Positions 1-58,765 of a stretch of DNA of 64,000 nucleotides are shown in pieces (within the stretch, counting starts at the first letter, position 1; the number at the start of each line of letters is the position of its first letter). The stretch spans positions 310,001 through 374,000 of IMG/VR virus record IMGVR_UViG_3300034072_000758; one strand, 5' to 3'. The notes under the pieces were generated by a model. That model was not told where the DNA came from, searched no databases, and was given only the letters and a program-made list of their open reading frames with translations. The translations under genes and the position numbers were made by a program.

Positions 1-1201
1 CACGGCGATAGCGGTCAATTTCCGAAGGCTGACCGATGGCCTTTAAATAGTTGTCCGACAGCTTCACCGCGCTGCGGCCATTGACCGTCTTGAGTTTACA
101 AACGATACTCATGGCCTTCTTGCCAGCGGCACGGAAGTCGTTGGTGAAGTTGGTTCCCCAGCCGAAACCGAGGTTGACACGTTCCGCGAAATAGTCACGA
201 AGTTCAACCATATCCGTTCCGTTCAAAACGTAGGTGTCGTTGTTGTCCGAAACGTCCACGTCCAGCCCATCGGCGAAAATGACAGTCTTTTCCTGCGGAT
301 TGCGGTCATTTTCCAACCACCACTTAATTAATTCTTCGCCAGCCACATAGGCGTCCTTGGAGTCTGGACGAATTGATGGCCAATCCAGAAGATATTCTGG
401 CGCATCCTTGAGGAACTGGCTGGTTCCGTAAGTATCGGGAAGAATGGTACGGCGATCCGGGTACATTTCGCCCCAGAGTTCAGTAACCTTGTAAGGCGAA
501 TGTTTGAGGTCTTCGTCCGTTTCGGCTAATGCGGCTTGCGCCATCGGAAGCTCATGGGCGTTGGTGCCAACGGCTTTCAGGTTATATTTCATGGCAAAAT
601 AAACGTTCGATGTGCCGACGATGACGCCGTAATCCACCGCCATGCGGATCGCGCGGTCTTGCCAAGCGAACGAATGGCGGCGGCGGGTGCCCATATCAGC
701 AAAGACCACCTTGTTTTCTTGAAGGCGTTGAAGCTTCTGATGAAGAATGAACGCCGCGACTTCTTGATCATCATCTTCCTTCGATGGATCGGGATCGACC
801 GAGGCCATTTCATTGATGATAGCAAGAACGTAGATTTCCCAAAGGGTCGTCTGTTCGATAGGACCGGTGAACGTAATTTCGTACTGGCCTTCTTCGGTCT
901 TCGACGGGACAATGGCGAAGCTGACCTTATCAAAGTTGAAGGTCTTGAGCCATTTCAGAAAGTCCTTGTCGAAGTTGCCCTGCGAACCAATGTAGGCGAT
1001 TTCAGCCGGTGTGAACCGGAGATCGTAGAGTGAATTGATTTCGAGGCTCAAATGCTCTATATCGACCAGATCAGCCAGCTTGATTCCTTTGGAACGATTA
1101 GTAACCGCCCAAGTCGAAACCGTGCCACGAAGATGCTTCCAGTGATATTGGAGCATGGTGAACTTGTACAAATCATTGTCTGCGAGTGTCGTGATAATCA
1201 T
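1..1201 (-). CDS. pncB: Nicotinate phosphoribosyltransferase (PncB type), 3' end runs off the window; missing from the ORF track
   Basis: Manual translation from ATG 1201: MIITTLADNDLYKFTMLQ...TTLWEIYVLAIINE...FADMGTRRRHSFAWQ...GTSNVYFAMKYNLKAVGTNAHELPM...LPDTYGT...IRPDS...IFADGLD...FGWGTNFTND...SIVCK...AVKLSDN. These are NAPRTase motifs of the alphaproteobacterial type. Confidence 0.9.
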   Translation of the reverse strand, partial: MIITTLADNDLYKFTMLQYHWKHLRGTVSTWAVTNRSKGIKLADLVDIEHLSLEINSLYDLRFTPAEIAYIGSQGNFDKDFLKWLKTFNFDKVSFAIVPSKTEEGQYEITFTGPIEQTTLWEIYVLAIINEMASVDPDPSKEDDDQEVAAFILHQKLQRLQENKVVFADMGTRRRHSFAWQDRAIRMAVDYGVIVGTSNVYFAMKYNLKAVGTNAHELPMAQAALAETDEDLKHSPYKVTELWGEMYPDRRTILPDTYGTSQFLKDAPEYLLDWPSIRPDSKDAYVAGEELIKWWLENDRNPQEKTVIFADGLDVDVSDNNDTYVLNGTDMVELRDYFAERVNLGFGWGTNFTNDFRAAGKKAMSIVCKLKTVNGRSAVKLSDNYLKAIGQPSEIDRYRR

Positions 1202-1205
1202 GGCC

Positions 1206-2318
1206 TTAGTCCCTCGCCAGATGCTTGTTTTTTTGGATCATCAGATAATGATCCTCGAACATGATGCGGGGATCGACTTCATCCAGAGGAACCCACTTTG
1301 CTTTTTTGGCGTCGTCAGCCGCCTTGATTTTCGGGAGACCGAACGCCTTAATAAGACGCTTGTTGAACGAAGCGTTACTTTCGCCGCGTTCGGGCTTGGG
1401 AGCCGTAGGAACGAGGTGATAGATCGTCGCTTGTGTGATGGTGCGCAGACGGGTAGAGCGATAAGGATTGTCTTCCAGAGACACGCCCTTGATCGCGCCA
1501 CGAAGAACAGCGGTCGGCACGTCGATCTTGGTTTCTTCGATCAGTTCACGCATAGAACCGTCAATGAACGTTTCATTGCGGTTCAAGTGGCCACCCGGAA
1601 GCGCCCACAAATTTTTGCCGGGAAACGATTTACGTTGAACCAGAAGGATATGGCCGGACTGAATGACGATGTTATCCACAGTCACGAAGTTTGGCGGATA
1701 CGGAGACGAATCCCATTGTGCCAGATAGTTCTTCATGAACACGAACTCTTCGTGTTGTTCCTTGTACGCAGCCGTGGACAAAAAGTCCGCCATGTACTGC
1801 GCCGCGCCATCACCGATATGCTCCGCATCGATAAAGCCCGTTTCCAGATACTTGTCGCGCAAGGGCGTGGCGCTCAGACCAATGTTGTTGAGTGGAGAGG
1901 TCCAGCATTCCGCATTGATGCTTTCCCATTGCGGGAACAGTTTCAGATAGAAACTGGTATTGTCCTTCGAGTGGCCGATCAAGGTCACACGCTCGGCGCT
2001 GAACTGGCGATCATCGTCCAGTTTCAGATTGCGCACAGCGGCATTGACATTCTTAGTCCAGTCGGTAAGGGTCGGCTGATCTTCGATATATTCGATGGAT
2101 ACGCGCGGGTCTTCGAAATGAGCCAGCGACTTGCGGATCATCGCAGCGCGTTCATTTTCAAAGAATGGATTGTAGGAATTTCGTGAGCGGTTGGCCGATC
2201 CAACCAGAATGAGAACATGGCGAGCATGTTGAAGTGCTTTGCGCACTACCGACAAATGGCCTTTATGGAAAGGCTGGAACCTGCCGATGAACACGGCAAG
2301 ATCATAATCGTAGTTCAT
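1206..2318 (-). CDS. nadM: Bifunctional NMN/NaMN adenylyltransferase - ADP-ribose pyrophosphatase (NadM-Nudix)
   Basis: GRFQPFHKGH (HxGH), VGSAN, NPF, SATPLR; C-terminal Nudix box WALPGG...RELIEET; GGAGG SD before ATG 2318. Confidence 0.93.
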   Translation of the reverse strand: MNYDYDLAVFIGRFQPFHKGHLSVVRKALQHARHVLILVGSANRSRNSYNPFFENERAAMIRKSLAHFEDPRVSIEYIEDQPTLTDWTKNVNAAVRNLKLDDDRQFSAERVTLIGHSKDNTSFYLKLFPQWESINAECWTSPLNNIGLSATPLRDKYLETGFIDAEHIGDGAAQYMADFLSTAAYKEQHEEFVFMKNYLAQWDSSPYPPNFVTVDNIVIQSGHILLVQRKSFPGKNLWALPGGHLNRNETFIDGSMRELIEETKIDVPTAVLRGAIKGVSLEDNPYRSTRLRTITQATIYHLVPTAPKPERGESNASFNKRLIKAFGLPKIKAADDAKKAKWVPLDEVDPRIMFEDHYLMIQKNKHLARD

Positions 2319-2363
2319 ATTGACCTCCAATATGATATGTGAACTGCGGGTCTATCCCGAATC

Positions 2364-2394
2364 TATTTATATTAGGATCGACTTTACCTGTCAA
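2364..2394 (-). promoter_or_regulatory. Composite sigma70 (TTGACA-N17-TATAAA) and T4-type late (TATAAATA) promoter of nadM-pncB
   Basis: Minus strand TTGACA 2394-2389, 17 nt spacer, TATAAATA 2371-2364. Confidence 0.7.
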
Positions 2395-2402
2395 TTTTTA
2401 TT

Positions 2403-2594
2403 TTAGACAAAATCAATTTCTAATGCAGCTTTACGAAGATCGCCATAATGAAGCTGAGATTTTTGAAGAGTTACCGGATCACGGCAAATGCGTTTACCAA
2501 TATCCAGCCGATGAAGAGAGGCTGATACACCTAAGTCTTTTATGACTTTGTAGGTCGCGTAACCGTTGTTGACGACATCACCTTTAGCATACAT
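2403..2594 (-). CDS. Hypothetical protein
   Basis: ORF with GGAGAG SD. Confidence 0.6.
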   Translation of the reverse strand: MYAKGDVVNNGYATYKVIKDLGVSASLHRLDIGKRICRDPVTLQKSQLHYGDLRKAALEIDFV

Positions 2595-3120: not shown

Positions 3121-3666
3121 TCAAGCTGACCAGTGTTTATTACATCTGGGTTCGTAAATGTCAGAATGACCAAGCTCGATCTCTTTATCGTCCTTGTATT
3201 TCTTAAACGTTTTGTGCGCAGGTTGGCCGCATACTGAACAAATAGCTTTCAATTTTACGACTTCATCAGCCATTGCCATAAGTGTTGCCGTCAGTTCGAA
3301 GGCTTCACCCTTCCAATTAGCATCCAAACCCGTGACTACGACTTCTTTCCCGGCCTTTAGTAGACTCGCTATAAAGTCGATAACGCTGATTTCCATATTG
3401 GAGAAAAATTGAATTTCATCCAAACACACCATTTCCGCATCTGGAACTAGATTTTCCACTTCGGAGAATGATGAAATTGACATCGAGTCAACGGAAAGAC
3501 CATCGTGGCTTGTGATTTTTGACTCGGAGTAGCGATTGTCGAAGGCGGTCTTGAGGACCAAAACCGCTTTTGATTCGCCGTTTCTCGCCCATAAAATGCG
3601 CTTTAGAAGCTCGGTAGTCTTTCCGGCGAACATAGGGCCACAGATTACAGTGAGTTTTCCGTACAT
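3121..3666 (-). CDS. tdk: Thymidine kinase (type II)
   Basis: GPMFAGKTTELL P-loop, DEIQFF, GLD, CSVCG and YEPRC zinc motifs. Confidence 0.95.
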   Translation of the reverse strand: MYGKLTVICGPMFAGKTTELLKRILWARNGESKAVLVLKTAFDNRYSESKITSHDGLSVDSMSISSFSEVENLVPDAEMVCLDEIQFFSNMEISVIDFIASLLKAGKEVVVTGLDANWKGEAFELTATLMAMADEVVKLKAICSVCGQPAHKTFKKYKDDKEIELGHSDIYEPRCNKHWSA

Positions 3667-4038: not shown

Positions 4039-4288
4039 AATGTGCTCCTATAGTTTATTAACTATAAAGTATTCTTTTCAAATATTCAATTTTATTTTAA
4101 ATAAACGCTTCATTCTAATTGTATGATTTGCTTACAATTTTTTTATGACATTTACTATTTTATAACCTGTCTTTCTTATCAAAATATGTTATGTTGTGTT
4201 CAAGGACAAACCGCCCCATGACATTGGTTATGTCTTTCGAACTCAACTCAACATCTTCGTCCACTATACCAGATTAAGGTTACTCCAA

Positions 4289-4900
4289 ATGAACCAGTCT
4301 CAAGCTCAGGCCCCCGCGTTCCACGAATCCGATTTGAAAAATATCTCGGATATGATTTCCTCCTTTGTGGGAAATAACAAAGTTGCTGTTTCGGAACTTC
4401 CGAATACACTTTCTCACATCATCAACACGTACAACAATATCCGGCTGACCGGCGTGTCGATCAATGAGGCCGACTCTGCGGTATCAGCAACAGCCGTCAC
4501 AGATGAACCCCGCACTCCGGTCGTTCCGGTCAATAAGTCGGTCAAACAAGACTACATCATCTGTCTGCTGGATGGCGGTCGCTTCAAGTCCCTCAAGAAG
4601 CACCTCAAGACCAAGTATAATCTGACACCCCAGCAATACCGTGAAATGTTCGGCCTCAAGGCAGACTATCCGATGGTCGCCCCCAGCTACTCATTGGCTC
4701 GTTCGGCACTGGCTAAGGCAAGCGGTCTGGGGCGCACCACACACGAACGTCTCGGCAAGAACAGTGGACGCAAGGTAGCGGCTTCTGCGACTACCAAGCG
4801 GACCACGAAGGCAGCTTCCCCGGTTCAAGCCAAGACTACCTCTGCTAAGACTACGGCCAAGGCCGCTCCTGCTACCAAGCGTGGCAAAAAGGCGGCTTAA
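4289..4900 (+). CDS. mucR: MucR/Ros family regulator with Lys/Ala/Thr-rich C-terminal tail
   Basis: SSFVGNNKV..ELP..I, PVVPVNKSV, ICLLDGGRFKSLKKHL...LTPQQYREMFGLKADYPMVAPSYS..RS.LAKASGLG. Confidence 0.92.
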   Translation: MNQSQAQAPAFHESDLKNISDMISSFVGNNKVAVSELPNTLSHIINTYNNIRLTGVSINEADSAVSATAVTDEPRTPVVPVNKSVKQDYIICLLDGGRFKSLKKHLKTKYNLTPQQYREMFGLKADYPMVAPSYSLARSALAKASGLGRTTHERLGKNSGRKVAASATTKRTTKAASPVQAKTTSAKTTAKAAPATKRGKKAA

Positions 4901-20454: not shown

Positions 20455-22260
20455 TTAGTTTGTGAAGCTCAAAGCGGTGATTTGCTGACCAGCGGTAAGT
20501 CTGAAACGAACCAAGATCATGTTGCTTGTAGCGTTTGTGGATGACTGCGTACCGAAGGTAACTGTATAAGTTCCCGACGCGCCTGCCATGACCGTACCGG
20601 AAGCACAACCTGCGTTCGTGTCACCAGTTTCACCCGGAACACCAGCGCCATCGTAAGATTGGAAAGCATTCCACCAACCGCCAGCGGCGTTTGGTGAGAT
20701 TGTTCCGTTGTCGGAAACACCCGGAAGCTTAATCCAGCAACCGTTATACGAACCTGTTACGTTGATTTTGAACTGCGACAGAGCGGTTCTTGCGAAAGCA
20801 AATGTTACGTATTGAGCACCCGAACGACCAGTCGAATAGTTTGGACCGACTGGTAGATAACCAGTCGAATAGTTTGTTTGGTCATGCTTCAAGACACCGC
20901 CAACAACAGTAGCTTCATAAGTTGGAAGCGCTGCTGTGTTCGACCAAGCTGTATAAGCTGCGGACGGCGTGTCACCCGAACCTGTGTTGACGCGAATAGC
21001 GTTGTTCGAGTTAGGAGAAGAACCCAGACCGGTAACAGTTACCGACAGTTCATCAATACGCACACCAGCCGAACCAATCTTCACGAGAATGTTGTTGGAC
21101 GACAGATCGGTTGTTGTCGAAGAACCGTTTACGTTCTTAGCAACACCTTGGAGACGACCTACGTTGTGAACATTCGAACCGTCGATATTTACGTTTACTG
21201 CGGAAAATGCTGTGGCGGCGGTCGTGTTGGCAGCGAATGGTGTTGAAAGACCCAGACCAGAATAGGTCAGAGTGTCCGAAGAAATGATGGAGTTTGTACC
21301 CGAAATTACGAATGGATCAGACCCACCGTAATAGGTTTGGCCAGCCAAATTCGAGATAGAAGCGTTTGCGGTCAGAACCGAACCAGTTGTGTAGTGCGGG
21401 ATATTCGAGGAATACGCCAGAGTGGCCGACGACTGATTGACCGACGCCAATGTGATCGAAGGAACTGCTGTCAGTTGGTCTCTTACGAAATAAACTTCAC
21501 CGGTGTTACCAGCACCGGAGTGGGTGATCTGAAACTTGTTAACACCCAAAGAAGCCGCTGCGAGCGTAACTTGTGTGCTGATCGATTTCCAAAAACCCGG
21601 TGTTGATACAGGGAAATCGTTTTGGTTAGAGAGAACCAAACCAGAATAGTTGCCAGTATCACCCGAACCGGTCAGGGTCTTCGATCCCAACGAAGTGCCG
21701 TTCATCAACAGGGAGATTGTACCCGAAGACGCTGGACCCATATTGGCGAAAAGGTTAGACGATACACCCGACGCCGTAATACGAGTTACAGCCGACCCAG
21801 CCGTAATAGTAGAAGTACCCGAATTGTCAGCAACACCCGAAGCCAAGAACGGTGTGTTACCGGCGGTGTTTGTTACTGTCAGGGCGTTAGCGTTAGGGAA
21901 AGCTGGTGGCGCAGATGGTGCCAACAGACCCAAAATAGTATTAAGCTGATCAACAGCGTTAGAAAGAGAAGTGTTGCTTGTTAAAGGAACCGCGCCAGCG
22001 TAGGAACCGTCGCCCTTCGAAGCATCACCCATAAGAACGTCATATCCATCAGATACGGCGTTAGCCAGCGCGGCATTAAGCTGAGACAAGACAACAACGT
22101 CAGTATTCGCAACGGCGGGAGCCGCGCGGAAATTGACTAATGTTGACTCATCGGCGCTGCGGGCTTCGAGCGTAGTTGAGTTTGTTTTAAGGCGGGGACC
22201 AGCCTTACCAAACTGAACATTGGCTCCAATACCACTGAGTCCAAATTGTTTGCTTTCCAT
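20455..22260 (-). CDS. Virion structural or fibre protein (Ser/Thr/Gly-rich, beta-rich)
   Basis: Body paralogous to 56870..58765; N-terminus paralogous to the ORF at 63700; CTAAATA promoter upstream. Confidence 0.75.
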   Translation of the reverse strand: MESKQFGLSGIGANVQFGKAGPRLKTNSTTLEARSADESTLVNFRAAPAVANTDVVVLSQLNAALANAVSDGYDVLMGDASKGDGSYAGAVPLTSNTSLSNAVDQLNTILGLLAPSAPPAFPNANALTVTNTAGNTPFLASGVADNSGTSTITAGSAVTRITASGVSSNLFANMGPASSGTISLLMNGTSLGSKTLTGSGDTGNYSGLVLSNQNDFPVSTPGFWKSISTQVTLAAASLGVNKFQITHSGAGNTGEVYFVRDQLTAVPSITLASVNQSSATLAYSSNIPHYTTGSVLTANASISNLAGQTYYGGSDPFVISGTNSIISSDTLTYSGLGLSTPFAANTTAATAFSAVNVNIDGSNVHNVGRLQGVAKNVNGSSTTTDLSSNNILVKIGSAGVRIDELSVTVTGLGSSPNSNNAIRVNTGSGDTPSAAYTAWSNTAALPTYEATVVGGVLKHDQTNYSTGYLPVGPNYSTGRSGAQYVTFAFARTALSQFKINVTGSYNGCWIKLPGVSDNGTISPNAAGGWWNAFQSYDGAGVPGETGDTNAGCASGTVMAGASGTYTVTFGTQSSTNATSNMILVRFRLTAGQQITALSFTN

Positions 22261-22426
22261 CAATTTTCTCCTAAAAAGAATCGGGATGTTACCGATATGT
22301 ATTTAGTCGATGCCCTTGATAATTAAGGCCGTAGTTACTGTAAAAAATGATTTTGATCGGTTTTAACTTGACGAATATTTTTTATCCTATAGATTGACTA
22401 TGAATATTCAATTTGAGGTTTAGAAA

Positions 22427-22921: not shown

Positions 22922-22962
22922 GCTATTGACATTGGGTATAGAGGTAGCTTATAAATACATCA

Positions 22963-33690: not shown

Positions 33691-34173
33691 ATGAAGCTAC
33701 ACGATTTCTTTGAGGATGATAGCGCACATACCGCCGCTGCCGCTGAGACGGGCTTCTGGGGCCGTCAAGGCGCAGGGTGTATCGTGTTTGCTAAATCCAC
33801 GAAGAGGTTCCTGCTGGCTTACAGATCGGAATACGTGATGGAGGGGAATACTTGGGGCACTTGGGGCGGGGCTATCGACTCCAACGAAGACCCGCGTACA
33901 GCCGTTGTTCGTGAACTCAAAGAAGAAACCGAGTTTCATTCCCCAATATCAAAAATCATCCCTCTTTATATTTTCAAAAAGAGCGATTTCCAATATTTCA
34001 ATTTTGTCGTGATTATCGAAGACGAATACGAGCCAGACTTGAATTGGGAAAATTCGGGCTTCAAATGGTGTGCTTTGGGAGAGTTCCCATCACCATTACA
34101 CTTTGGTCTCCAATCCTTGTTGAAGGATGGAGCCAGCATGAGCACGTTAAAGAAGCTTTCAGACATCCAATAA
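33691..34173 (+). CDS. Nudix hydrolase
   Basis: WGGAIDSNEDPRTAVVRELKEET; P.PLHFG. Confidence 0.88.
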   Translation: MKLHDFFEDDSAHTAAAAETGFWGRQGAGCIVFAKSTKRFLLAYRSEYVMEGNTWGTWGGAIDSNEDPRTAVVRELKEETEFHSPISKIIPLYIFKKSDFQYFNFVVIIEDEYEPDLNWENSGFKWCALGEFPSPLHFGLQSLLKDGASMSTLKKLSDIQ

Positions 34174-37387: not shown

Positions 37388-37450
37388 ATTTTATATCCTT
37401 TCTCATTACGTATATTCTCTTATAGCATCAAACTAAGTATTGTCAACACA

Positions 37451-40600: not shown

Positions 40601-41097
40601 TTTTGCCTTTCGAACCAGCTTTTAACCACATCGGTATGAGACCCGAAGCAAAGTTCTTCCGGTTCCAAAATGGCTCGGATTGCTGGCACTTCATTGGTTG
40701 GAACGAAGTCTTTCAAAACTTGTGCCATCGGAATAGGCGTCTTAGCTTCGCAAAAGGCCATCATATTACGACCGTTGTTGTATGAACTTATCAGACGAAC
40801 ATCAACCGGGTCAATAACCAGTCCAGTTTCTTCCACAAGCTCACGTACCGCAGCATGTTCGATAGAAGCGTCAGAAAGCTCTTGGAAGCCACCTACGAGC
40901 GCCCAGCCGTCCTTACAAGGTTGAATGCCTCGTTGGGCTACCAGAAGGCCCACAGAGCCTAATGGGAACGATACCGGTAAGAGAAGTACAGCAACCCCGA
41001 TTGGGTTGATGAATGTGATGTTGCCGCAGCTTGAACAAGCCTTGGGGTACTCAGTCGCGGTATGCTCGGTGCCGCAGAATTTACAGAACTTGTCCAT
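40597..41097 (-). CDS. Zinc-ribbon Nudix hydrolase
   Basis: FCKFCG..CSSCG..F.NP; WALVGGF...AAVRELVEETG. Confidence 0.88.
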   Translation of the reverse strand: MDKFCKFCGTEHTATEYPKACSSCGNITFINPIGVAVLLLPVSFPLGSVGLLVAQRGIQPCKDGWALVGGFQELSDASIEHAAVRELVEETGLVIDPVDVRLISSYNNGRNMMAFCEAKTPIPMAQVLKDFVPTNEVPAIRAILEPEELCFGSHTDVVKSWFERQK

Positions 41098-52048: not shown

Positions 52049-52112
52049 TAATTGCGTTAAGAAAACATAAACCCTAATATAGGTTCCAGTGATCTTTATC
52101 AAGGAACCATTT

Positions 52113-54362
52113 ATGTCCATTTCTATTTTTAATGACGCAAAATCCAAAGCAATCGAGTTCGGCCACGAGTATATCACGCCTGAGCATGTGTTCGCCGCGT
52201 TGTTGAACAAAGAAGAAATCCAAAAGATGATTTCTTCGTTTGATATAGAACCACAACAAATCCAAGATGAACTGGAAGAATACCTCAAAGAGGCTTCGGT
52301 CCAGAACATTATCCCGGCCCTTCAATCGGATGGCCACTTGAAAGTTACTCGCGCTGTTGATAGATTACAGCGATTCGAAATCCTCATTTCCACGATTACG
52401 AATGGACAGTTGGACGACAACTTCTATCTGTTTTCCGCGATGTTCACCGACAACGACAGTTTCGTTTATTACCTTCTCAGCAAGTTCGGCGTGGAGAAGG
52501 CTCAGGTCGAGACCTACGTGAAGCGCTATTATGCCGTGAAGTTCTTCGATCATGACGAAAAGACTGGCGCTCCCGCGACCAAGGGTAAGAAAGAAGATAC
52601 CCCAAGCGAACTGGAAAAGTATGCGGTCAACCTCAACGAAAAAGCCAAAGAACTCAAAATCGATCCTCTGATCGGTCGAGAAAGCGAAGTCTATTCCATC
52701 ACGCAAATCATGGCGCGTTATAAGAAGAATAACGCCATGCTGATCGGTGAAGCTGGCGTCGGTAAGACAGCTATCGTGGAAGGTCTGGCTCTGAATATCG
52801 TCAATGGCAACGTGCCAGAATCCCTTCGTGATGCCACGATCTATGCTTTGGATATTGCCTCTCTGTTGGCTGGTACTCGTTTCCGTGGTGAATTTGAAGA
52901 ACGTGTCAAGCTGGTTCTGGAAGAACTCAAGCTCGATCCGAATGCGATCCTCTTCATTGACGAAATTCACATGATCCTTAGCGCCGGGGCATCGGGCGAC
53001 AACAACGTCAACGCGGCTAACCTGTTGAAGCCCGCCCTTGCCCGTGGTGATTTGCGTTGTATCGGTTCTACGACATATGAGGAATATCGTAAGTTTGTGG
53101 AAAAGGACAAGGCACTCGCGCGCCGCTTCAAGAAGCTGGATGTCAACGAACCTACGGTCGAAGACGCTAAGGCGATTTTGAAAGGCTCCAAGAGCTATTA
53201 CGAGACCTTCCACGGTCTGTACTTCGATGACGAAGCTCTGGATGCCGCTGTGGACCTCTCACATCGTTATGTGAAGGGTTTCCTGCCCGACAAGGCATTC
53301 GATCTGATTGATGACGCTGCGGCTCATATTAAGCTCTCTGGTAACCTTCGTAATCTGAATGTCGATGACATCGAGGCCGAAGTTTCCAAGACAGCCCGTA
53401 TTCCCCCGGCGACGGTATCGGAATCGGAAAATCAAAAGCTCGAAAATCTTGAAGGTGATCTTTTGGGCGAAATTTTCGGCCAAGATGCTGCGATCACCGA
53501 ATTGACCGATTCTATCATCATTTCCAGATCGGGATTGCGTGAACCCAATAAACCCGCTGCTGCCTATCTGTTTGCTGGACCAACCGGTGTCGGTAAGACC
53601 GAAGTAGCAAAGCAACTGGCTCGAACCCTTGGTATCGAACTAGTGCGTATGGACATGTCGGAATATATGGAAAAGCACTCGGTCTCTAAGTTGATCGGTG
53701 CTGGCCCCGGTTATGTCGGGTATGGTGAAGGCGGGAATGGATCGGGTAAACTGATCAACGCCATCGACACCACGCCACATTGCGTCCTTTTGATTGATGA
53801 AATCGAAAAGGCTCATGCTGATGTACAGAACATTTTCCTTCAAGTCATGGACAACGCTTCGTTGGAATCGTCTTCCGGTAAGAAAGTTGATTTCCAAAAT
53901 GTCATTATCATTATGACGACAAATGCCGGATCGGCCATCAGTGAGAAAAGCTCAATCGGCTTCGGGAACAGCACCAATACGGATAACTCCGGGGAACAAG
54001 ATAAGGCCATCAAGGCTATGTTCTCTCCTGAGTTCCGTAATCGTCTGGATGCGATCATTCGGTTCTCCGCTTTGGATGAACGCAACATGGTCAGCATTGC
54101 TAACAAATTCGTTGGTGAAATGATCTCTCAAGCCAAGGTTTCAAAGGGTGTGACGATTACGGTTGCTGATGAAGTGGTATCGTTCTTGGCTGTCAAGGGT
54201 TACGACCGCGCATATGGTGCTCGTCCTATGAAGCGCGCGATCACCGATTACATCAAGAAGCCTCTGGCGCGTCTTTTGTTGAAGGCAAAGGCTGGGGATC
54301 ATCTTCGTATCGAATTAAACGAAGTACCGGTAGTCAAGATTATCGAACAAATTGAGGCATAA
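52113..54362 (+). CDS. clpA: ATP-dependent Clp protease ATPase subunit ClpA
   Basis: HEYITPEH; two AAA modules ([16 protein letters not shown]); [16 protein letters not shown]; IGF loop; no ClpB middle domain. Confidence 0.93.
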
Positions 54363-56045: not shown

Positions 56046-56871
56046 TAAACTCTTGTCCCAGAAACTCGTTTACCTCTACCTTGATGCGTTCTATTTGCTC
56101 GTCAGAAAAATTAATACCTTGTAGAATAGACTGGTTGTGTTGAGTAATAGTTTCGCCTCGATCTCCCGAATATCGGTCCTCTCGCTTCATATCTGAAATG
56201 AAATAAAGAAGTTCGGATAAGCTCATAGTTTTTCCATGAACGTGTGCCTGTAAATATCCTTCATCGCTTCGAGAATAATATACGCGCTTGTCATCCAACT
56301 TGGCCGTGATCATGATGTCATCGTGTGAGCCTAGTTGATTTAAAGTCGTAGGGACAAACCCATAACGTAAATATTTGGCAACACGAAACATTTGTGTCGG
56401 GCGGGTTGGCCGCAATACTTTGTTCCAGAGATCACTCAACGACTCAGGATCGATGTAATATATTCCATCGTTATCCATAGCAAATTGACACACTGATAAA
56501 TCGAAGTCTTGTAGCAGGGCTACGATAGATTCAAATTCTTTGTGAACAACATTTACCGGAATGTTTTGTCCGTCGATTTGAATTTTAAACATTGTGCCAT
56601 TTGAAGTCTTATAGTCGGCTTGCCCTTTATGGTCGTAAATATACTTCATGACAAAATCAAATGTCTCTTTGTTTCGACAAAATATATCTATGTCACCGTT
56701 AGTAAGCTCGACATATTCCTTTCCAATTAATTTTCGAACAAAGCCCCCGGCAACCCAAGGACCATGTTCTATACTTAAGAACGGGAAGTATTTGCTGATT
56801 TTTTTCAGCAACTCGAAGTTTAGGTCCAAAGACGAATATTTGTATAAATATGTATGATTTTGGAGGTTCAT
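56035..56871 (-). CDS. Nucleotidyltransferase resembling the CCA-adding enzyme/poly(A) polymerase head domain (start uncertain)
   Basis: WVAGGFVR, DIDIF, LQDFDLSVCQFA, R..KY..YGF. Confidence 0.7.
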   Translation of the reverse strand: MNLQNHTYLYKYSSLDLNFELLKKISKYFPFLSIEHGPWVAGGFVRKLIGKEYVELTNGDIDIFCRNKETFDFVMKYIYDHKGQADYKTSNGTMFKIQIDGQNIPVNVVHKEFESIVALLQDFDLSVCQFAMDNDGIYYIDPESLSDLWNKVLRPTRPTQMFRVAKYLRYGFVPTTLNQLGSHDDIMITAKLDDKRVYYSRSDEGYLQAHVHGKTMSLSELLYFISDMKREDRYSGDRGETITQHNQSILQGINFSDEQIERIKVEVNEFLGQEFIKL

Positions 56872-58765
56872 GATGCCGAGCGTAAATAAGAGTCGTGTGA
56901 AGACCACGGGGAAAGGTGAAATATACTATGCCGACGAAGATACACTGTCAACGTCGAATGTAGCAACCCCAACGGAAGAAGGGGACACACAAACGTATTT
57001 CCTGAGCGGGGATAACATCGGCTATGGTCATGGTATTTTTGCTGGCGTCAATGGCGATGAATCTAATACTATCATGGAGTTCAAGTCTCTCGTAGCAGGG
57101 ACCGGTATTTTCCTGACTTCGACCGATTCGGTTATTACGATCTCCACAACGTCAAATACGATTGGAAATGGATCATCTATCGCAAATGGTCTTATGCTTC
57201 CCCTCGGAAACACAAATTTTGCTGGCGGCGCGGTCAATCTTACCGAGAATATGGACACCACATCGGCCATAAACGATATTAATAAGCTTCTGGGTCTTCT
57301 TGTTCCACCAGCACCTACCGCATTCCCTAACGCCGCGCTGACTATTGCTAACCTGAACGGTAATCAACCTCTTTTGGCTGCTGCGGTTCCAAACAACACA
57401 GACTCCGGTGCTCCTGCTGCCGGTAACGCAGTCAACCGCGTGTCTGGTCTGGTTGTTAGTTCGAATAATTTCAACGACATTGGCCCGGTATCCAACGGTA
57501 CATTGAGCCTGATGTTGAACGATTCCCCGGCCTCGATCATTACTCTGGACGGCAACGCTCATTCGGTTACAGGTCTGGTCGTAAGTGATCTTAAGAATTT
57601 CCCAGCGAACGTGGCTGGTTTCTGGAAATCGATGGATGTTGCGGTAGTGAACCGTTCGGTATCTGCTGGTGTTAACAAAATGAAAATTGTTCACTCTGCT
57701 GCTGGTAACACCAATAACGTTTATTTCGTTACGGATACAATGACTTCTACTCCAAATCTGGTTTCGACCGGTTTGGCTCAAGCATCGGCTGGTACGTTTG
57801 CTTATTCTTCGGGTGTTCCACATTACGGAACTGGCGGGCAACTGATCGTTCAAGGTTCGATTACTAACCTTGCTGGTAATACTTACTATGGTGGCTCTGA
57901 TCCCCTGTCGGTTTCGGGTACAAATAGTATTATAAATGCTCAATCATTTACATATTCGAATTTAGGTATCAATACACCTATCGCAAAAGATACAACCGCC
58001 GCTACACCAATTACTTCGATTTTGGTGAACGTGGATGGTTCTGTCCATGATGTTGGTTTGGTCCAAGGCATCGTTAAAAATGTTAACGGTCAATCGAGTG
58101 CTACGAACTTAGCTAACACAAAGATTTTGGTTAAGCGTGGATCAGCTTCGTCAACTCGTATTGATGAAATGGCTGTGCCGGTTACAGGTCTCGGTAATAA
58201 TCCAAACGCCAATTCGGCGGTTCGTGTTTCGATCCTCAGCAACTCCGATACCCCAGCGGCCTCTCATGGTACATGGGCCTCGAACGCGACTCTGGTTAAT
58301 TACGAAGCTGCTGTTGTTGGTGGTATTCTGGCTCATGACCAAACCGATTATTCAGTTGGTTTCTTACCCGTTGGACCGAACTTGTCTTCGGGAAGAAACG
58401 GAACACAGTATGCCACATTTGCGTTCAACAGAGCCGTAGTATCGCAGTTCAAGATCAACGTAATTGGCACATATTCGGGATGCTGGGTGAAACTGCCGGG
58501 TGTTTCGGATAGTGGCTCTATTTCACCAAACTCCGCAAATGGTTGGTGGAATGCTTTCCTCCCATACAACGGTGCTGGTGTACCGGGCAACATTTCTGAC
58601 TCGTCGGCTGGTATCGCAGTCGGTTCAGTGATGAGCGGCGCGTCGGGTTCCTACAATGTGACCTTCGGCCCACAATCGTCAACAAATTCTATCGGTAATA
58701 TTATTCTGGTCCGTTTTAAACTGACAGCCGGTCAAAAAATAACAGCTTTGAGCTTCACAAACTAA
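56870..58765 (+). CDS. Virion structural or fibre protein
   Basis: Paralog of 20455..22260; TATAAATA upstream. Confidence 0.75.
   Translation: MMPSVNKSRVKTTGKGEIYYADEDTLSTSNVATPTEEGDTQTYFLSGDNIGYGHGIFAGVNGDESNTIMEFKSLVAGTGIFLTSTDSVITISTTSNTIGNGSSIANGLMLPLGNTNFAGGAVNLTENMDTTSAINDINKLLGLLVPPAPTAFPNAALTIANLNGNQPLLAAAVPNNTDSGAPAAGNAVNRVSGLVVSSNNFNDIGPVSNGTLSLMLNDSPASIITLDGNAHSVTGLVVSDLKNFPANVAGFWKSMDVAVVNRSVSAGVNKMKIVHSAAGNTNNVYFVTDTMTSTPNLVSTGLAQASAGTFAYSSGVPHYGTGGQLIVQGSITNLAGNTYYGGSDPLSVSGTNSIINAQSFTYSNLGINTPIAKDTTAATPITSILVNVDGSVHDVGLVQGIVKNVNGQSSATNLANTKILVKRGSASSTRIDEMAVPVTGLGNNPNANSAVRVSILSNSDTPAASHGTWASNATLVNYEAAVVGGILAHDQTDYSVGFLPVGPNLSSGRNGTQYATFAFNRAVVSQFKINVIGTYSGCWVKLPGVSDSGSISPNSANGWWNAFLPYNGAGVPGNISDSSAGIAVGSVMSGASGSYNVTFGPQSSTNSIGNIILVRFKLTAGQKITALSFTN

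What the first reader, a model, noticed from the sequence alone, without database searches (positions are those of the whole stretch)
1..2394. Phage NAD salvage module built on PncB (nicotinate) rather than the usual NadV
Seen: NadM-Nudix coupled to a PncB-type phosphoribosyltransferase. Established: described phage salvage or reconstitution routes use Nampt/NadV with NMNAT (KVP40, NARP2) or Adps with Namat (NARP1) to offset NAD-depleting defences. Inference: this is a deamidated variant that needs PncA and NadE from the host or from genes beyond the window edge, or a PncB-fold enzyme that accepts nicotinamide.
Basis: partly seen in the sequence, partly recalled or inferred. Interest (0 to 1): 0.6.

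Follow-up and report, generated by a model that had tools for sequence, protein, structure and literature searches.

The report
Megaphage nicotinate-route NAD salvage operon
A 517-kb soil phage carries a complete set of genes for rebuilding NAD from nicotinamide by way of nicotinic acid (PncA, PncB, NadM-Nudix, NadE), where most phages use NadV; this gene set has been noted in giant phages before but never tested.

Summary
On the minus strand, window 1206-2318 encodes a NadM-Nudix fusion (370 aa). Window 1-1201 encodes most of a PncB-type nicotinate phosphoribosyltransferase (414 aa in full), which is clearly not NadV/Nampt.

A nicotinamidase (PncA) gene overlaps the pncB stop codon just beyond the window edge and is followed by a strong terminator. 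A glutamine-dependent NAD synthetase (NadE) lies 146 kb away in the same 516,805-bp phage genome, and a second NadE-like gene lies 20 kb away. The genome has no NadV, Prs/Adps or PnuC.

The phage therefore appears to encode the full deamidated (Preiss-Handler) route: nicotinamide, nicotinate, NaMN, NaAD, NAD. It also has a Nudix domain for ADP-ribose.

This is not unique:
- Agrobacterium phage Atu_ph07 and Sinorhizobium phage Phosso carry the same enzyme set.
- At least 137 IMG/VR viral contigs carry a PncB relative. Among the best 80, NadE (59), PncA (45) or an NMNAT (28) lies within 10 kb.
- A 2024 paper described Preiss-Handler "NAD-jumbo phages" from sequence alone.

No phage version of this route has been tested biochemically or against NAD-depleting defences. 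I file it as a new member of a known kind, of moderate interest.

The parts
2366..2394 (-). Promoter-like site for the operon: TTGACA, 17-nt spacer, TATAAA. It lies 48 bases upstream of the nadM ATG.
   Evidence: Read directly. The pattern TTGACA-N16-18-TATAA occurs 3 times in the window against 0.13 expected. The consensus scanner did not list it because it requires T at position 6 of the -10 hexamer. Function is inferred.
1206..2318 (-). nadM-nudix: NMN/NaMN adenylyltransferase fused to an ADP-ribose pyrophosphatase (370 aa).
   Evidence: Motifs GRFQPFHKGH (12-21), SATPLR (149-154) and the Nudix box at 243-265 with REx2EE intact.
1..1201 (-). pncB: ATP-coupled nicotinate phosphoribosyltransferase. 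The window holds residues 1-400 of 414; the full gene is G000:C1:309957-311201 (L001:1457-2701).

The rest of the system lies outside the window:
- pncA: G000:309322-309960, or to 309945 from the better ATG (L001:822-1460), minus strand.
- Terminator: G000:309293-309316 (L001:793-816).
- Glutamine-dependent nadE: G000:456063-457820, plus strand (L002:670-2427).
- NadE-like gene: G000:290082-290966, minus strand (L003:1285-2169).
   Evidence: Phospho-histidine motif GTNAHE with H216, and GTRRRH, GWGTNFTND and KLSDN all kept. pncA. Terminator: -22.5 kcal/mol, z -5.1. nadE. NadE-like.
4196..4900 (+). Ros/MucR-family transcription regulator, a neighbour and possibly linked to the operon. This is context, not a shown part of the system.
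   Evidence: PF05443, 125 bits. A MucR-like gene lies directly upstream of NadM-Nudix in related viral contigs L012 and L026.

Best explanation
The region is the start of a three-gene phage operon, nadM-nudix, pncB, pncA. It has a promoter-like site at one end and a strong terminator at the other. Together with a glutamine-dependent nadE elsewhere in the genome, it gives the phage a self-contained deamidated (Preiss-Handler) NAD salvage route.

Proposed steps:
1. PncA deamidates nicotinamide to nicotinate.
2. PncB joins nicotinate to PRPP, driven by ATP through phospho-His216, to give NaMN.
3. The NadM domain adenylylates NaMN to NaAD.
4. NadE amidates NaAD to NAD using glutamine.
5. The Nudix domain splits ADP-ribose into AMP and ribose-5-phosphate, which the host Prs can return to PRPP.

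Nicotinamide and ADP-ribose are the products of NAD-cleaving enzymes. The module can therefore rebuild NAD after NADase-type defences such as TIR, SIR2 or SEFIR, or simply keep NAD high during a long megaphage infection.

What is shown here: gene identities, intact catalytic motifs, operon layout, and absence of the NadV, Adps/Namat and PnuC routes. What is inferred: substrate preferences, flux and physiological role.
For: - Family assignments and catalytic motifs for all four enzymes.
- PncA-like model with pLDDT 86.3, whose top 14 PDB matches are nicotinamidases.
- Tight coupling: a 4-nt gap between nadM and pncB, and a pncB stop that overlaps the first pncA ATG, with GAGGGG in front of the second ATG.
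- Terminator right after pncA.
- Only one PF04095 gene in the 516,805-bp genome, and no Prs or PnuC.
- NadE NF010588 at 507.9 bits, above the cut-off of 479.
- Conservation: related viral contigs L012 and L026 carry NadM-Nudix, PncB, PncA and NadE on one strand. Of the 80 best viral PncB loci, 59 have NadE, 45 have PncA, 28 have an NMNAT and 21 have all three within 10 kb.
- Atu_ph07 and Phosso have the same set.
- NadM enzymes can use NaMN and work with NAD synthetase in Acinetobacter: PMC3376133.
- A bacterial nadM-pncB operon exists in Hahella: PMC2330246.
Against: - No enzyme was assayed.
- PncB, NadM-Nudix and PncA all fall below the curated NCBIfam equivalog cut-offs (372.5 vs 379, 370.8 vs 397, 46 vs 174).
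- This PncB is unusually divergent. Its terminal branch is 2.05 against a median of 0.22. It differs at 34 of 125 columns conserved in cellular PncB.
- The best-studied NadM-Nudix enzymes are described as NMN enzymes.
- nadE is unlinked, 146 kb away.
- A counter-defence role is pure inference. The genome has no NAD-dependent ligase to explain the demand for NAD.
Confidence: 0.7

Rival explanations
1. Francisella-type order of steps. PncA and PncB make NaMN. The single-domain NadE-like protein (294 aa, G000:290082-290966) acts as an NMN synthetase, converting NaMN to NMN. NadM then adenylylates NMN directly to NAD. The two-domain NadE would be a backup or serve host-derived NaAD.
For: The phage has a second, single-domain NadE homologue above the TIGR00552 domain cut-off (84.7 vs 63.65). 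It scores as well against the Francisella NMN synthetase 3FIU (50.7 bits) as against true NAD synthetases (52.1 and 51.0). NadM paired with an NMN synthetase is an established route (PMC3376133). The closest solved NadM-Nudix proteins are named as NMN enzymes. Small NadE homologues also occur in phages that carry NadM-Nudix, such as Xanthomonas phage X1.
Against: The NadE-like gene is 20 kb away, among genes with no Pfam match. Its similarity does not separate NMN synthetase from NAD synthetase. A bona fide two-domain NAD synthetase is present and sits in the same operon in relatives L012 and L026.
Confidence: 0.15
2. The PncB-fold enzyme has shifted to nicotinamide, or to another pyridine or ADP-ribose-derived acceptor. 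The pair would then work like NARP2 (Nampt plus NMNAT) without any deamidation.
For: The protein is exceptionally divergent, with a long branch, 34 of 125 conserved columns changed, two loop deletions and one insertion. It scores just below both PncB cut-offs. Its NadM-Nudix partner's nearest cultured-phage relatives pair with NadV.
Against: A nicotinamidase gene with intact active and metal sites is translationally coupled to it. The phage also keeps NadE, which is needed only on the deamidated route. All core PncB motifs are retained and there is no similarity to Nampt.
Confidence: 0.05
3. The pathway is as in the best explanation, but its role is general metabolic support: an auxiliary metabolic gene set that keeps NAD(H) up for a large, slow-replicating megaphage. 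It would not be a dedicated counter-defence.
For: The operon sits among nucleotide-metabolism genes, with thymidine kinase upstream and DHFR downstream. Large phages commonly carry NAD synthesis genes, and the 2024 survey interprets them this way (PMC11662467). No known anti-defence gene was seen next to it.
Against: The substrates are exactly the products of defence NADases. The Nudix domain handles ADP-ribose. The NadV, Adps and PnuC phage routes have all been shown to counter NAD depletion (abstracts and text). The two roles do not exclude each other.
Confidence: 0.4

Closest known systems
Preiss-Handler clusters of 'NAD-jumbo phages' (Microbiome 2024, PMC11662467)
   Same: Phage-encoded pncB plus an NaMN adenylyltransferase plus nadE, clustered, in very large phages. 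pncA was also noted in phages. That description is from sequence only.
   Different: The reported example (Kuafu_71) uses NadD and comes from gut phages of Bacteroidota. Here a NadM-Nudix fusion takes the NadD place, pncA is translationally coupled to pncB, nadE is unlinked, and the phage comes from soil or subsurface.
Agrobacterium phage Atu_ph07 and Sinorhizobium phage Phosso (cultured ~470-490 kb phages)
   Same: They carry PncB (39-42% identity), a PncA-like hydrolase (39-48%), an NMNAT, a Nudix and NadE. These are clustered in Phosso.
   Different: Their NMNAT and Nudix are separate genes. Phosso has an ammonia-type NadE in the cluster. The PncA-like genes are annotated only as 'hydrolase' or 'hypothetical'. 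The Atu_ph07 paper used pncB only as a PCR marker.
NARP2 / KVP40 NadV-NatV salvage
   Same: The same NadM-Nudix type of adenylyltransferase. It starts from nicotinamide and PRPP and also disposes of ADP-ribose.
   Different: It has two steps through NMN using Nampt/NadV. Here there is no NadV, and the route runs through nicotinate, NaMN and NaAD, which needs PncA and NadE.
Bacterial pncA-pncB(-nadE) salvage I operons and the Acinetobacter NadM + NADS network
   Same: The same four activities. NadM stands in for NadD in Acinetobacter, and a nadM-pncB operon exists in Hahella.
   Different: Those are cellular housekeeping genes, often under NrtR or NiaR control. Here the genes are on a lytic-type megaphage genome and are only 38-42% identical to the nearest cellular PncB.

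Membership tests
PncB (type I, ATP-coupled nicotinate phosphoribosyltransferase) | Matches the NAPRTase N-terminal and catalytic domain models | tested here: met
   PF17767 at 91.9 bits and PF04095 at 126.2 bits, both above gathering.
PncB (type I, ATP-coupled nicotinate phosphoribosyltransferase) | Reaches the curated PncB cut-offs (NF003704 subfamily, TIGR01514 equivalog) | tested here: not met
   372.5 vs 379 and 253.8 vs 269.55. These are full-length, best-of-library hits that fall just short.
PncB (type I, ATP-coupled nicotinate phosphoribosyltransferase) | Phospho-histidine motif and PRPP/ATP-binding motifs | tested here: met
   GTNAHE with H216 aligns with the same motif in 1YBE and yeast 1VLP. 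GTRRRH, LPDTYGT, GWGTNFTND and KLSDN are kept. That the His in this motif is the phosphorylated residue rests on my own knowledge.
PncB (type I, ATP-coupled nicotinate phosphoribosyltransferase) | Prefers nicotinate over nicotinamide | not testable with these tools
   Needs an enzyme assay.
Nampt / NadV | Matches the NadV-type model NF006629 or Nampt structures | tested here: not met
   No hit at E<=0.01, while control phage NadVs score 587 and 472 bits. BLASTP against a phage Nampt gives E=0.11. No Nampt appears among the PDB hits.
PncA nicotinamidase | Asp-Lys-Cys triad and the Asp-x-His...His metal site | tested here: met
   D15, C166, D59, H61 and H78 are invariant, and K107 is at least 90% conserved, in 20 phage homologues. 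They align to the P. horikoshii and M. tuberculosis PncA sites.
PncA nicotinamidase | Nicotinamidase fold | tested here: met
   AF2 model with pLDDT 86.3. The Foldseek top 14 are all nicotinamidases; the best is 1ILW with E 6e-10.
PncA nicotinamidase | Reaches the curated equivalog cut-off (NF008623) | tested here: not met
   46.4 vs 174 bits. It is still the best NCBIfam hit.
NadM-Nudix bifunctional enzyme | HxGH and SxTxxR nucleotidyltransferase motifs, plus an intact Nudix box, in one polypeptide | tested here: met
   Residues 12-21, 149-154 and 243-265. 2QJO at 199.6 bits. The equivalog NF003786 scores 370.8 vs 397, just short.
NadM-Nudix bifunctional enzyme | Accepts NaMN | not testable with these tools
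   The literature shows both NMN-preferring and dual-specificity NadM enzymes.
Glutamine-dependent NAD synthetase (NadE) | CN-hydrolase plus PP-loop synthetase domains, above the equivalog cut-off | tested here: met
   NF010588 at 507.9 vs 479. PF00795 and PF02540 both match. E44, K117, C154 and SGGVDS are present.
NARP1 (Adps + Namat) | Prs-like Adps and a second NAPRTase-family Namat | tested here: not met
   No PF13793 match, and only one PF04095 gene in the genome.
NARP3 (PnuC + NadR) | PnuC transporter | tested here: not met
   No PF04973 match. The only other HIGH-motif transferase is CoaD-like.

The most novel reading that the evidence does not exclude
The nadM-nudix, pncB, pncA operon plus nadE could be a fourth, deamidating NAD reconstitution pathway that megaphages of soil Alphaproteobacteria use to defeat NAD-depleting immunity. 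It would recycle both cleavage products, nicotinamide and ADP-ribose. In that reading, the unusually divergent PncB, or the extra single-domain NadE acting as an NMN synthetase, would be tuned for this role.
Probability: 0.3. Interest if true: 0.6.

Novelty: new member of a known kind. Interest (0 to 1): 0.4.

Why it matters
All three experimentally shown phage NAD-rebuilding routes avoid the nicotinate branch: NARP1, NARP2 and NARP3. This locus and its many relatives show that large phages also carry the whole nicotinate branch, including the nicotinamidase that links it to NADase products.

If it works as predicted, it adds a fourth counter-strategy to NAD-depletion immunity. It would also explain the 'hydrolase' and 'hypothetical' genes next to pncB in Atu_ph07 and Phosso. 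Both of those phages are cultured, so the idea is directly testable.

There is a practical warning for annotation as well. 'Nicotinate phosphoribosyltransferase' labels in phage records mix true PncB with NadV.

Tried and rejected
- **Consensus scanner:** the promoter/terminator scan found neither the promoter-like site nor the terminator. Both were then read directly and checked.
- **First IMG/VR scan:** a single-protein scan found only one relative. An alignment query was needed.
- **PHROGs:** no family matches PncB.
- **Other routes in the genome:** no Prs, PnuC or NAD-dependent ligase was found. The second CTP-transferase-like gene is CoaD-like, not an NMNAT.
- **NadE-like gene:** PDB similarity could not say whether it is an NAD synthetase or an NMN synthetase. 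Its neighbours have no Pfam match.
- **PncB tree:** it did not resolve the origin of our copy, which sits on a long branch in a polytomy, so no donor is named.
- **Sequencing runs:** they gave only habitat, a subsurface/soil metagenome that is probably the source sample. They gave no usable RNA evidence.
- **Not run:** the large representative-protein search, the search for homologous proteins and complex prediction. The family scans settled the identities, and no binding claim is made.
Full report
**What the window is.** The window is bases 310,001-374,000 of a 516,805-bp virus record with direct terminal repeats, rated 100% complete. It also encodes a portal protein, a tail sheath, tail-fibre-like proteins and a Lon-like protease. 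This is therefore a megaphage genome, not a bacterial chromosome. Its closest cultured relatives for the genes studied are Sinorhizobium phage Phosso (469 kb) and Agrobacterium phage Atu_ph07 (490 kb). The DNA occurs in a subsurface and a soil metagenome of one study. A Ros/MucR regulator in the window and the nearest NadM-Nudix relatives, which come from phages of Alphaproteobacteria, suggest an alphaproteobacterial host. That host assignment is an inference.

**The observation.** Two minus-strand genes fill window 1-2318.

- Window 1206-2318 encodes a 370-aa NadM-Nudix fusion. It matches Pfam CTP_transf_like and NUDIX, NF003786 at 370.8 bits (cut-off 397) and phrog_395. The best structures are Synechocystis slr0787 (2QJO) and Francisella NadM-Nudix (2QJT). 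The HxGH motif, the SxTxxR motif and the Nudix box are intact.
- Four bases downstream, window 1201-1 encodes 400 of the 414 residues of a PncB-type NAPRTase. The full protein matches NAPRTase_N and NAPRTase. It scores 372.5 bits on NF003704 and 253.8 on TIGR01514, each a few bits under its cut-off. It scores 288 bits against the A. tumefaciens NAPRTase structure 1YBE.
- It is not NadV. The genome has a single PF04095 gene. Our protein does not hit the NadV-type model NF006629, whereas the NadV partners of NadM-Nudix in Phaeobacter phage MD18 and Sinorhizobium phage phiN3 score 587 and 472 bits on it. BLASTP against the MD18 Nampt gives E=0.11.

**What lies beyond the edge.**

- The pncB stop codon overlaps an ATG of a 212-aa isochorismatase-family gene. 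A second ATG 15 bases on has a GAGGGG ribosome-binding site and matches where homologues start.
- That gene's best PDB sequence hits are nicotinamidases. The triad D15/K107/C166 and the metal ligands D59/H61/H78 are invariant or nearly so in 20 phage homologues.
- An AlphaFold model (pLDDT 86.3) finds only nicotinamidases in its top 14 PDB matches.
- Five bases after its stop lies a 13-bp GC-rich hairpin with a T-run (-22.5 kcal/mol, z -5.1). It is shared with the convergent DHFR gene.
- Upstream of nadM there is a TTGACA-17-TATAAA site. The pattern TTGACA-N16-18-TATAA occurs 3 times in the window against 0.13 expected.
- The unit is therefore nadM-nudix, pncB, pncA.

**The rest of the pathway.** A 585-aa two-domain NAD synthetase lies at G000:456063-457820. 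It has CN-hydrolase and PP-loop domains, scores 507.9 bits on NF010588 (cut-off 479), and has its E/K/C triad and SGGVDS motif present. A divergent single-domain NadE-like gene (294 aa) lies at G000:290082-290966. No Prs, PnuC or second NMNAT exists in the genome.

**Mechanism.** The simplest reading is the Preiss-Handler route, encoded entirely by the phage. Nicotinamide is converted to nicotinate by PncA and to NaMN by PncB. NadM then makes NaAD, and NadE makes NAD. The Nudix domain removes ADP-ribose. NadM enzymes that use NaMN and act with NAD synthetase are documented in Acinetobacter and archaea (PMC3376133). A bacterial nadM-pncB operon is listed for Hahella (PMC2330246). The alternative order, NaMN to NMN through an NMN synthetase as in Francisella, cannot be excluded because of the extra NadE-like gene. 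Whether the module mainly counters NADase defences or supports general metabolism cannot be decided from sequence. Its substrates are the NADase products, but it sits among nucleotide-metabolism genes (thymidine kinase and DHFR).

**How common it is.**

- In 50,697 GenBank phage records, NadM-Nudix occurs in 468. PncB relatives occur in 19, the PncA-like protein in 6 and the two-domain NadE in 18.
- In IMG/VR, at least 137 viral contigs encode a PncB relative. Among the best 80, NadE lies within 10 kb in 59, PncA in 45 and an NMNAT in 28. All three are present in 21, and five have a NadM-Nudix fusion.
- Contigs L012 and L026 have NadM-Nudix, PncB, PncA and NadE on one strand, at 39-46% identity to ours for NadM-Nudix, PncB and NadE (the PncA-like gene there is only weakly similar, ~25%). 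They also share other genes with this phage.
- The nearest cellular PncBs are only 38-42% identical. They come from Rhizobiales, Sphingomonadales and Acidobacteriaceae.
- In a quick tree, our copy sits on a very long branch in an unresolved polytomy with a viral clade and the two cellular clades. It differs at 34 of 125 columns conserved in cellular PncB, while other phage copies differ at 4-24. Core motifs are kept. This divergence is unexplained.

**What is already known.**

- The Atu_ph07 paper annotated pncB but used it only as a PCR marker, and it discussed NadR and PnuC (PMC6102473).
- Iyer et al. 2021 described jumbo-phage NAD systems as NAPRTase plus adenylyltransferases, read as the nicotinamide route (PMC7824862).
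- A 2024 survey named 'NAD-jumbo phages' with salvage or Preiss-Handler pathways, including a pncB-nadD-nadE cluster and phage pncA, from bioinformatics alone (PMC11662467).
- The NARP1/NARP2 preprint does not mention PncA, PncB or NadE. NARP3 is PnuC plus NadR (PMC13464706).
- The kind is therefore known from sequence. This locus is a new member with a NadM-Nudix in place of NadD and a coupled pncA. No phage version of the route has been tested experimentally.

**Verdict.** Novelty is modest and interest moderate, because cultured relatives make the counter-defence idea testable.

Noticed in passing
window 4196-4900 (+); L012:7986-8408; L026:7941-8372: A Ros/MucR-family regulator lies 1.9 kb from nadM. 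A MucR-like gene also sits directly upstream of NadM-Nudix in two related viral contigs. A second paralogue is at G000:88531-88992. It may regulate the operon, and it hints at an alphaproteobacterial host.
   Followed up: partly
G000:C1:290082-290966 (-) = L003:1285-2169: A divergent single-domain NadE-like protein (294 aa) scores equally well against NAD synthetases and the Francisella NMN synthetase. Distant relatives occur in cyanophages, Pelagibacter phage HTVC008M and Xanthomonas phage X1, where it lies about 2 kb from NadM-Nudix.
   Followed up: partly
window 1-1201 (-) and G000:309957-311201: This PncB is far more divergent than other phage or cellular copies. Its branch length is 2.05 against a median of 0.22. 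It has changes at 34 of 125 conserved columns, two loop deletions and a 13-residue insert. The cause is unexplained.
   Followed up: partly
L009:8001-9380 (= L031), 543-kb IMG/VR contig: The PncB homologue there reads GTNANKLPM. The phospho-histidine and the following Glu are replaced, so it may be inactive or not coupled to ATP.
   Followed up: no
L171:5102-6532 (Sinorhizobium phage phiN3 gp219): It is annotated 'nicotinate phosphoribosyltransferase' but matches the NadV-type model NF006629 at 472 bits. Phage records mix PncB and NadV under one name.
   Followed up: yes
window 2367-2394 (-), 22926-22954 (+), 37420-37446 (-): TTGACA-N16-18-TATAA occurs three times against 0.13 expected. This may be a class of host-type promoters in this phage.
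   Followed up: partly
window 3121-3666 (-); L001:252-794 (+): Thymidine kinase lies upstream of the NAD operon and dihydrofolate reductase is convergent downstream, so the neighbourhood is one of nucleotide metabolism. DHFR and pncA share a bidirectional terminator.
   Followed up: partly
window 20455-22263 (-) and 56870-58765 (+): Two large paralogues of phrog_8578 (unknown function; 693 and 572 bits) lie 35 kb apart. A Lon-like ATP-dependent protease is at 52089-54362.
   Followed up: no
G000:C1:212597-213604 (-) = L008:1465-2472: A 335-aa protein has a CoaD-like (pantetheine-phosphate adenylyltransferase) C-terminal domain and an unassigned 190-residue N-terminal part.
   Followed up: no
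window 33763-34104 (+) and 40777-40947 (-): The window holds two further Nudix-domain genes. The genome has five in total.
   Followed up: no
window 2403-2594 (-): A 63-aa ORF with its own ribosome-binding site ends just before the operon's promoter-like site. It has no family match.
   Followed up: no
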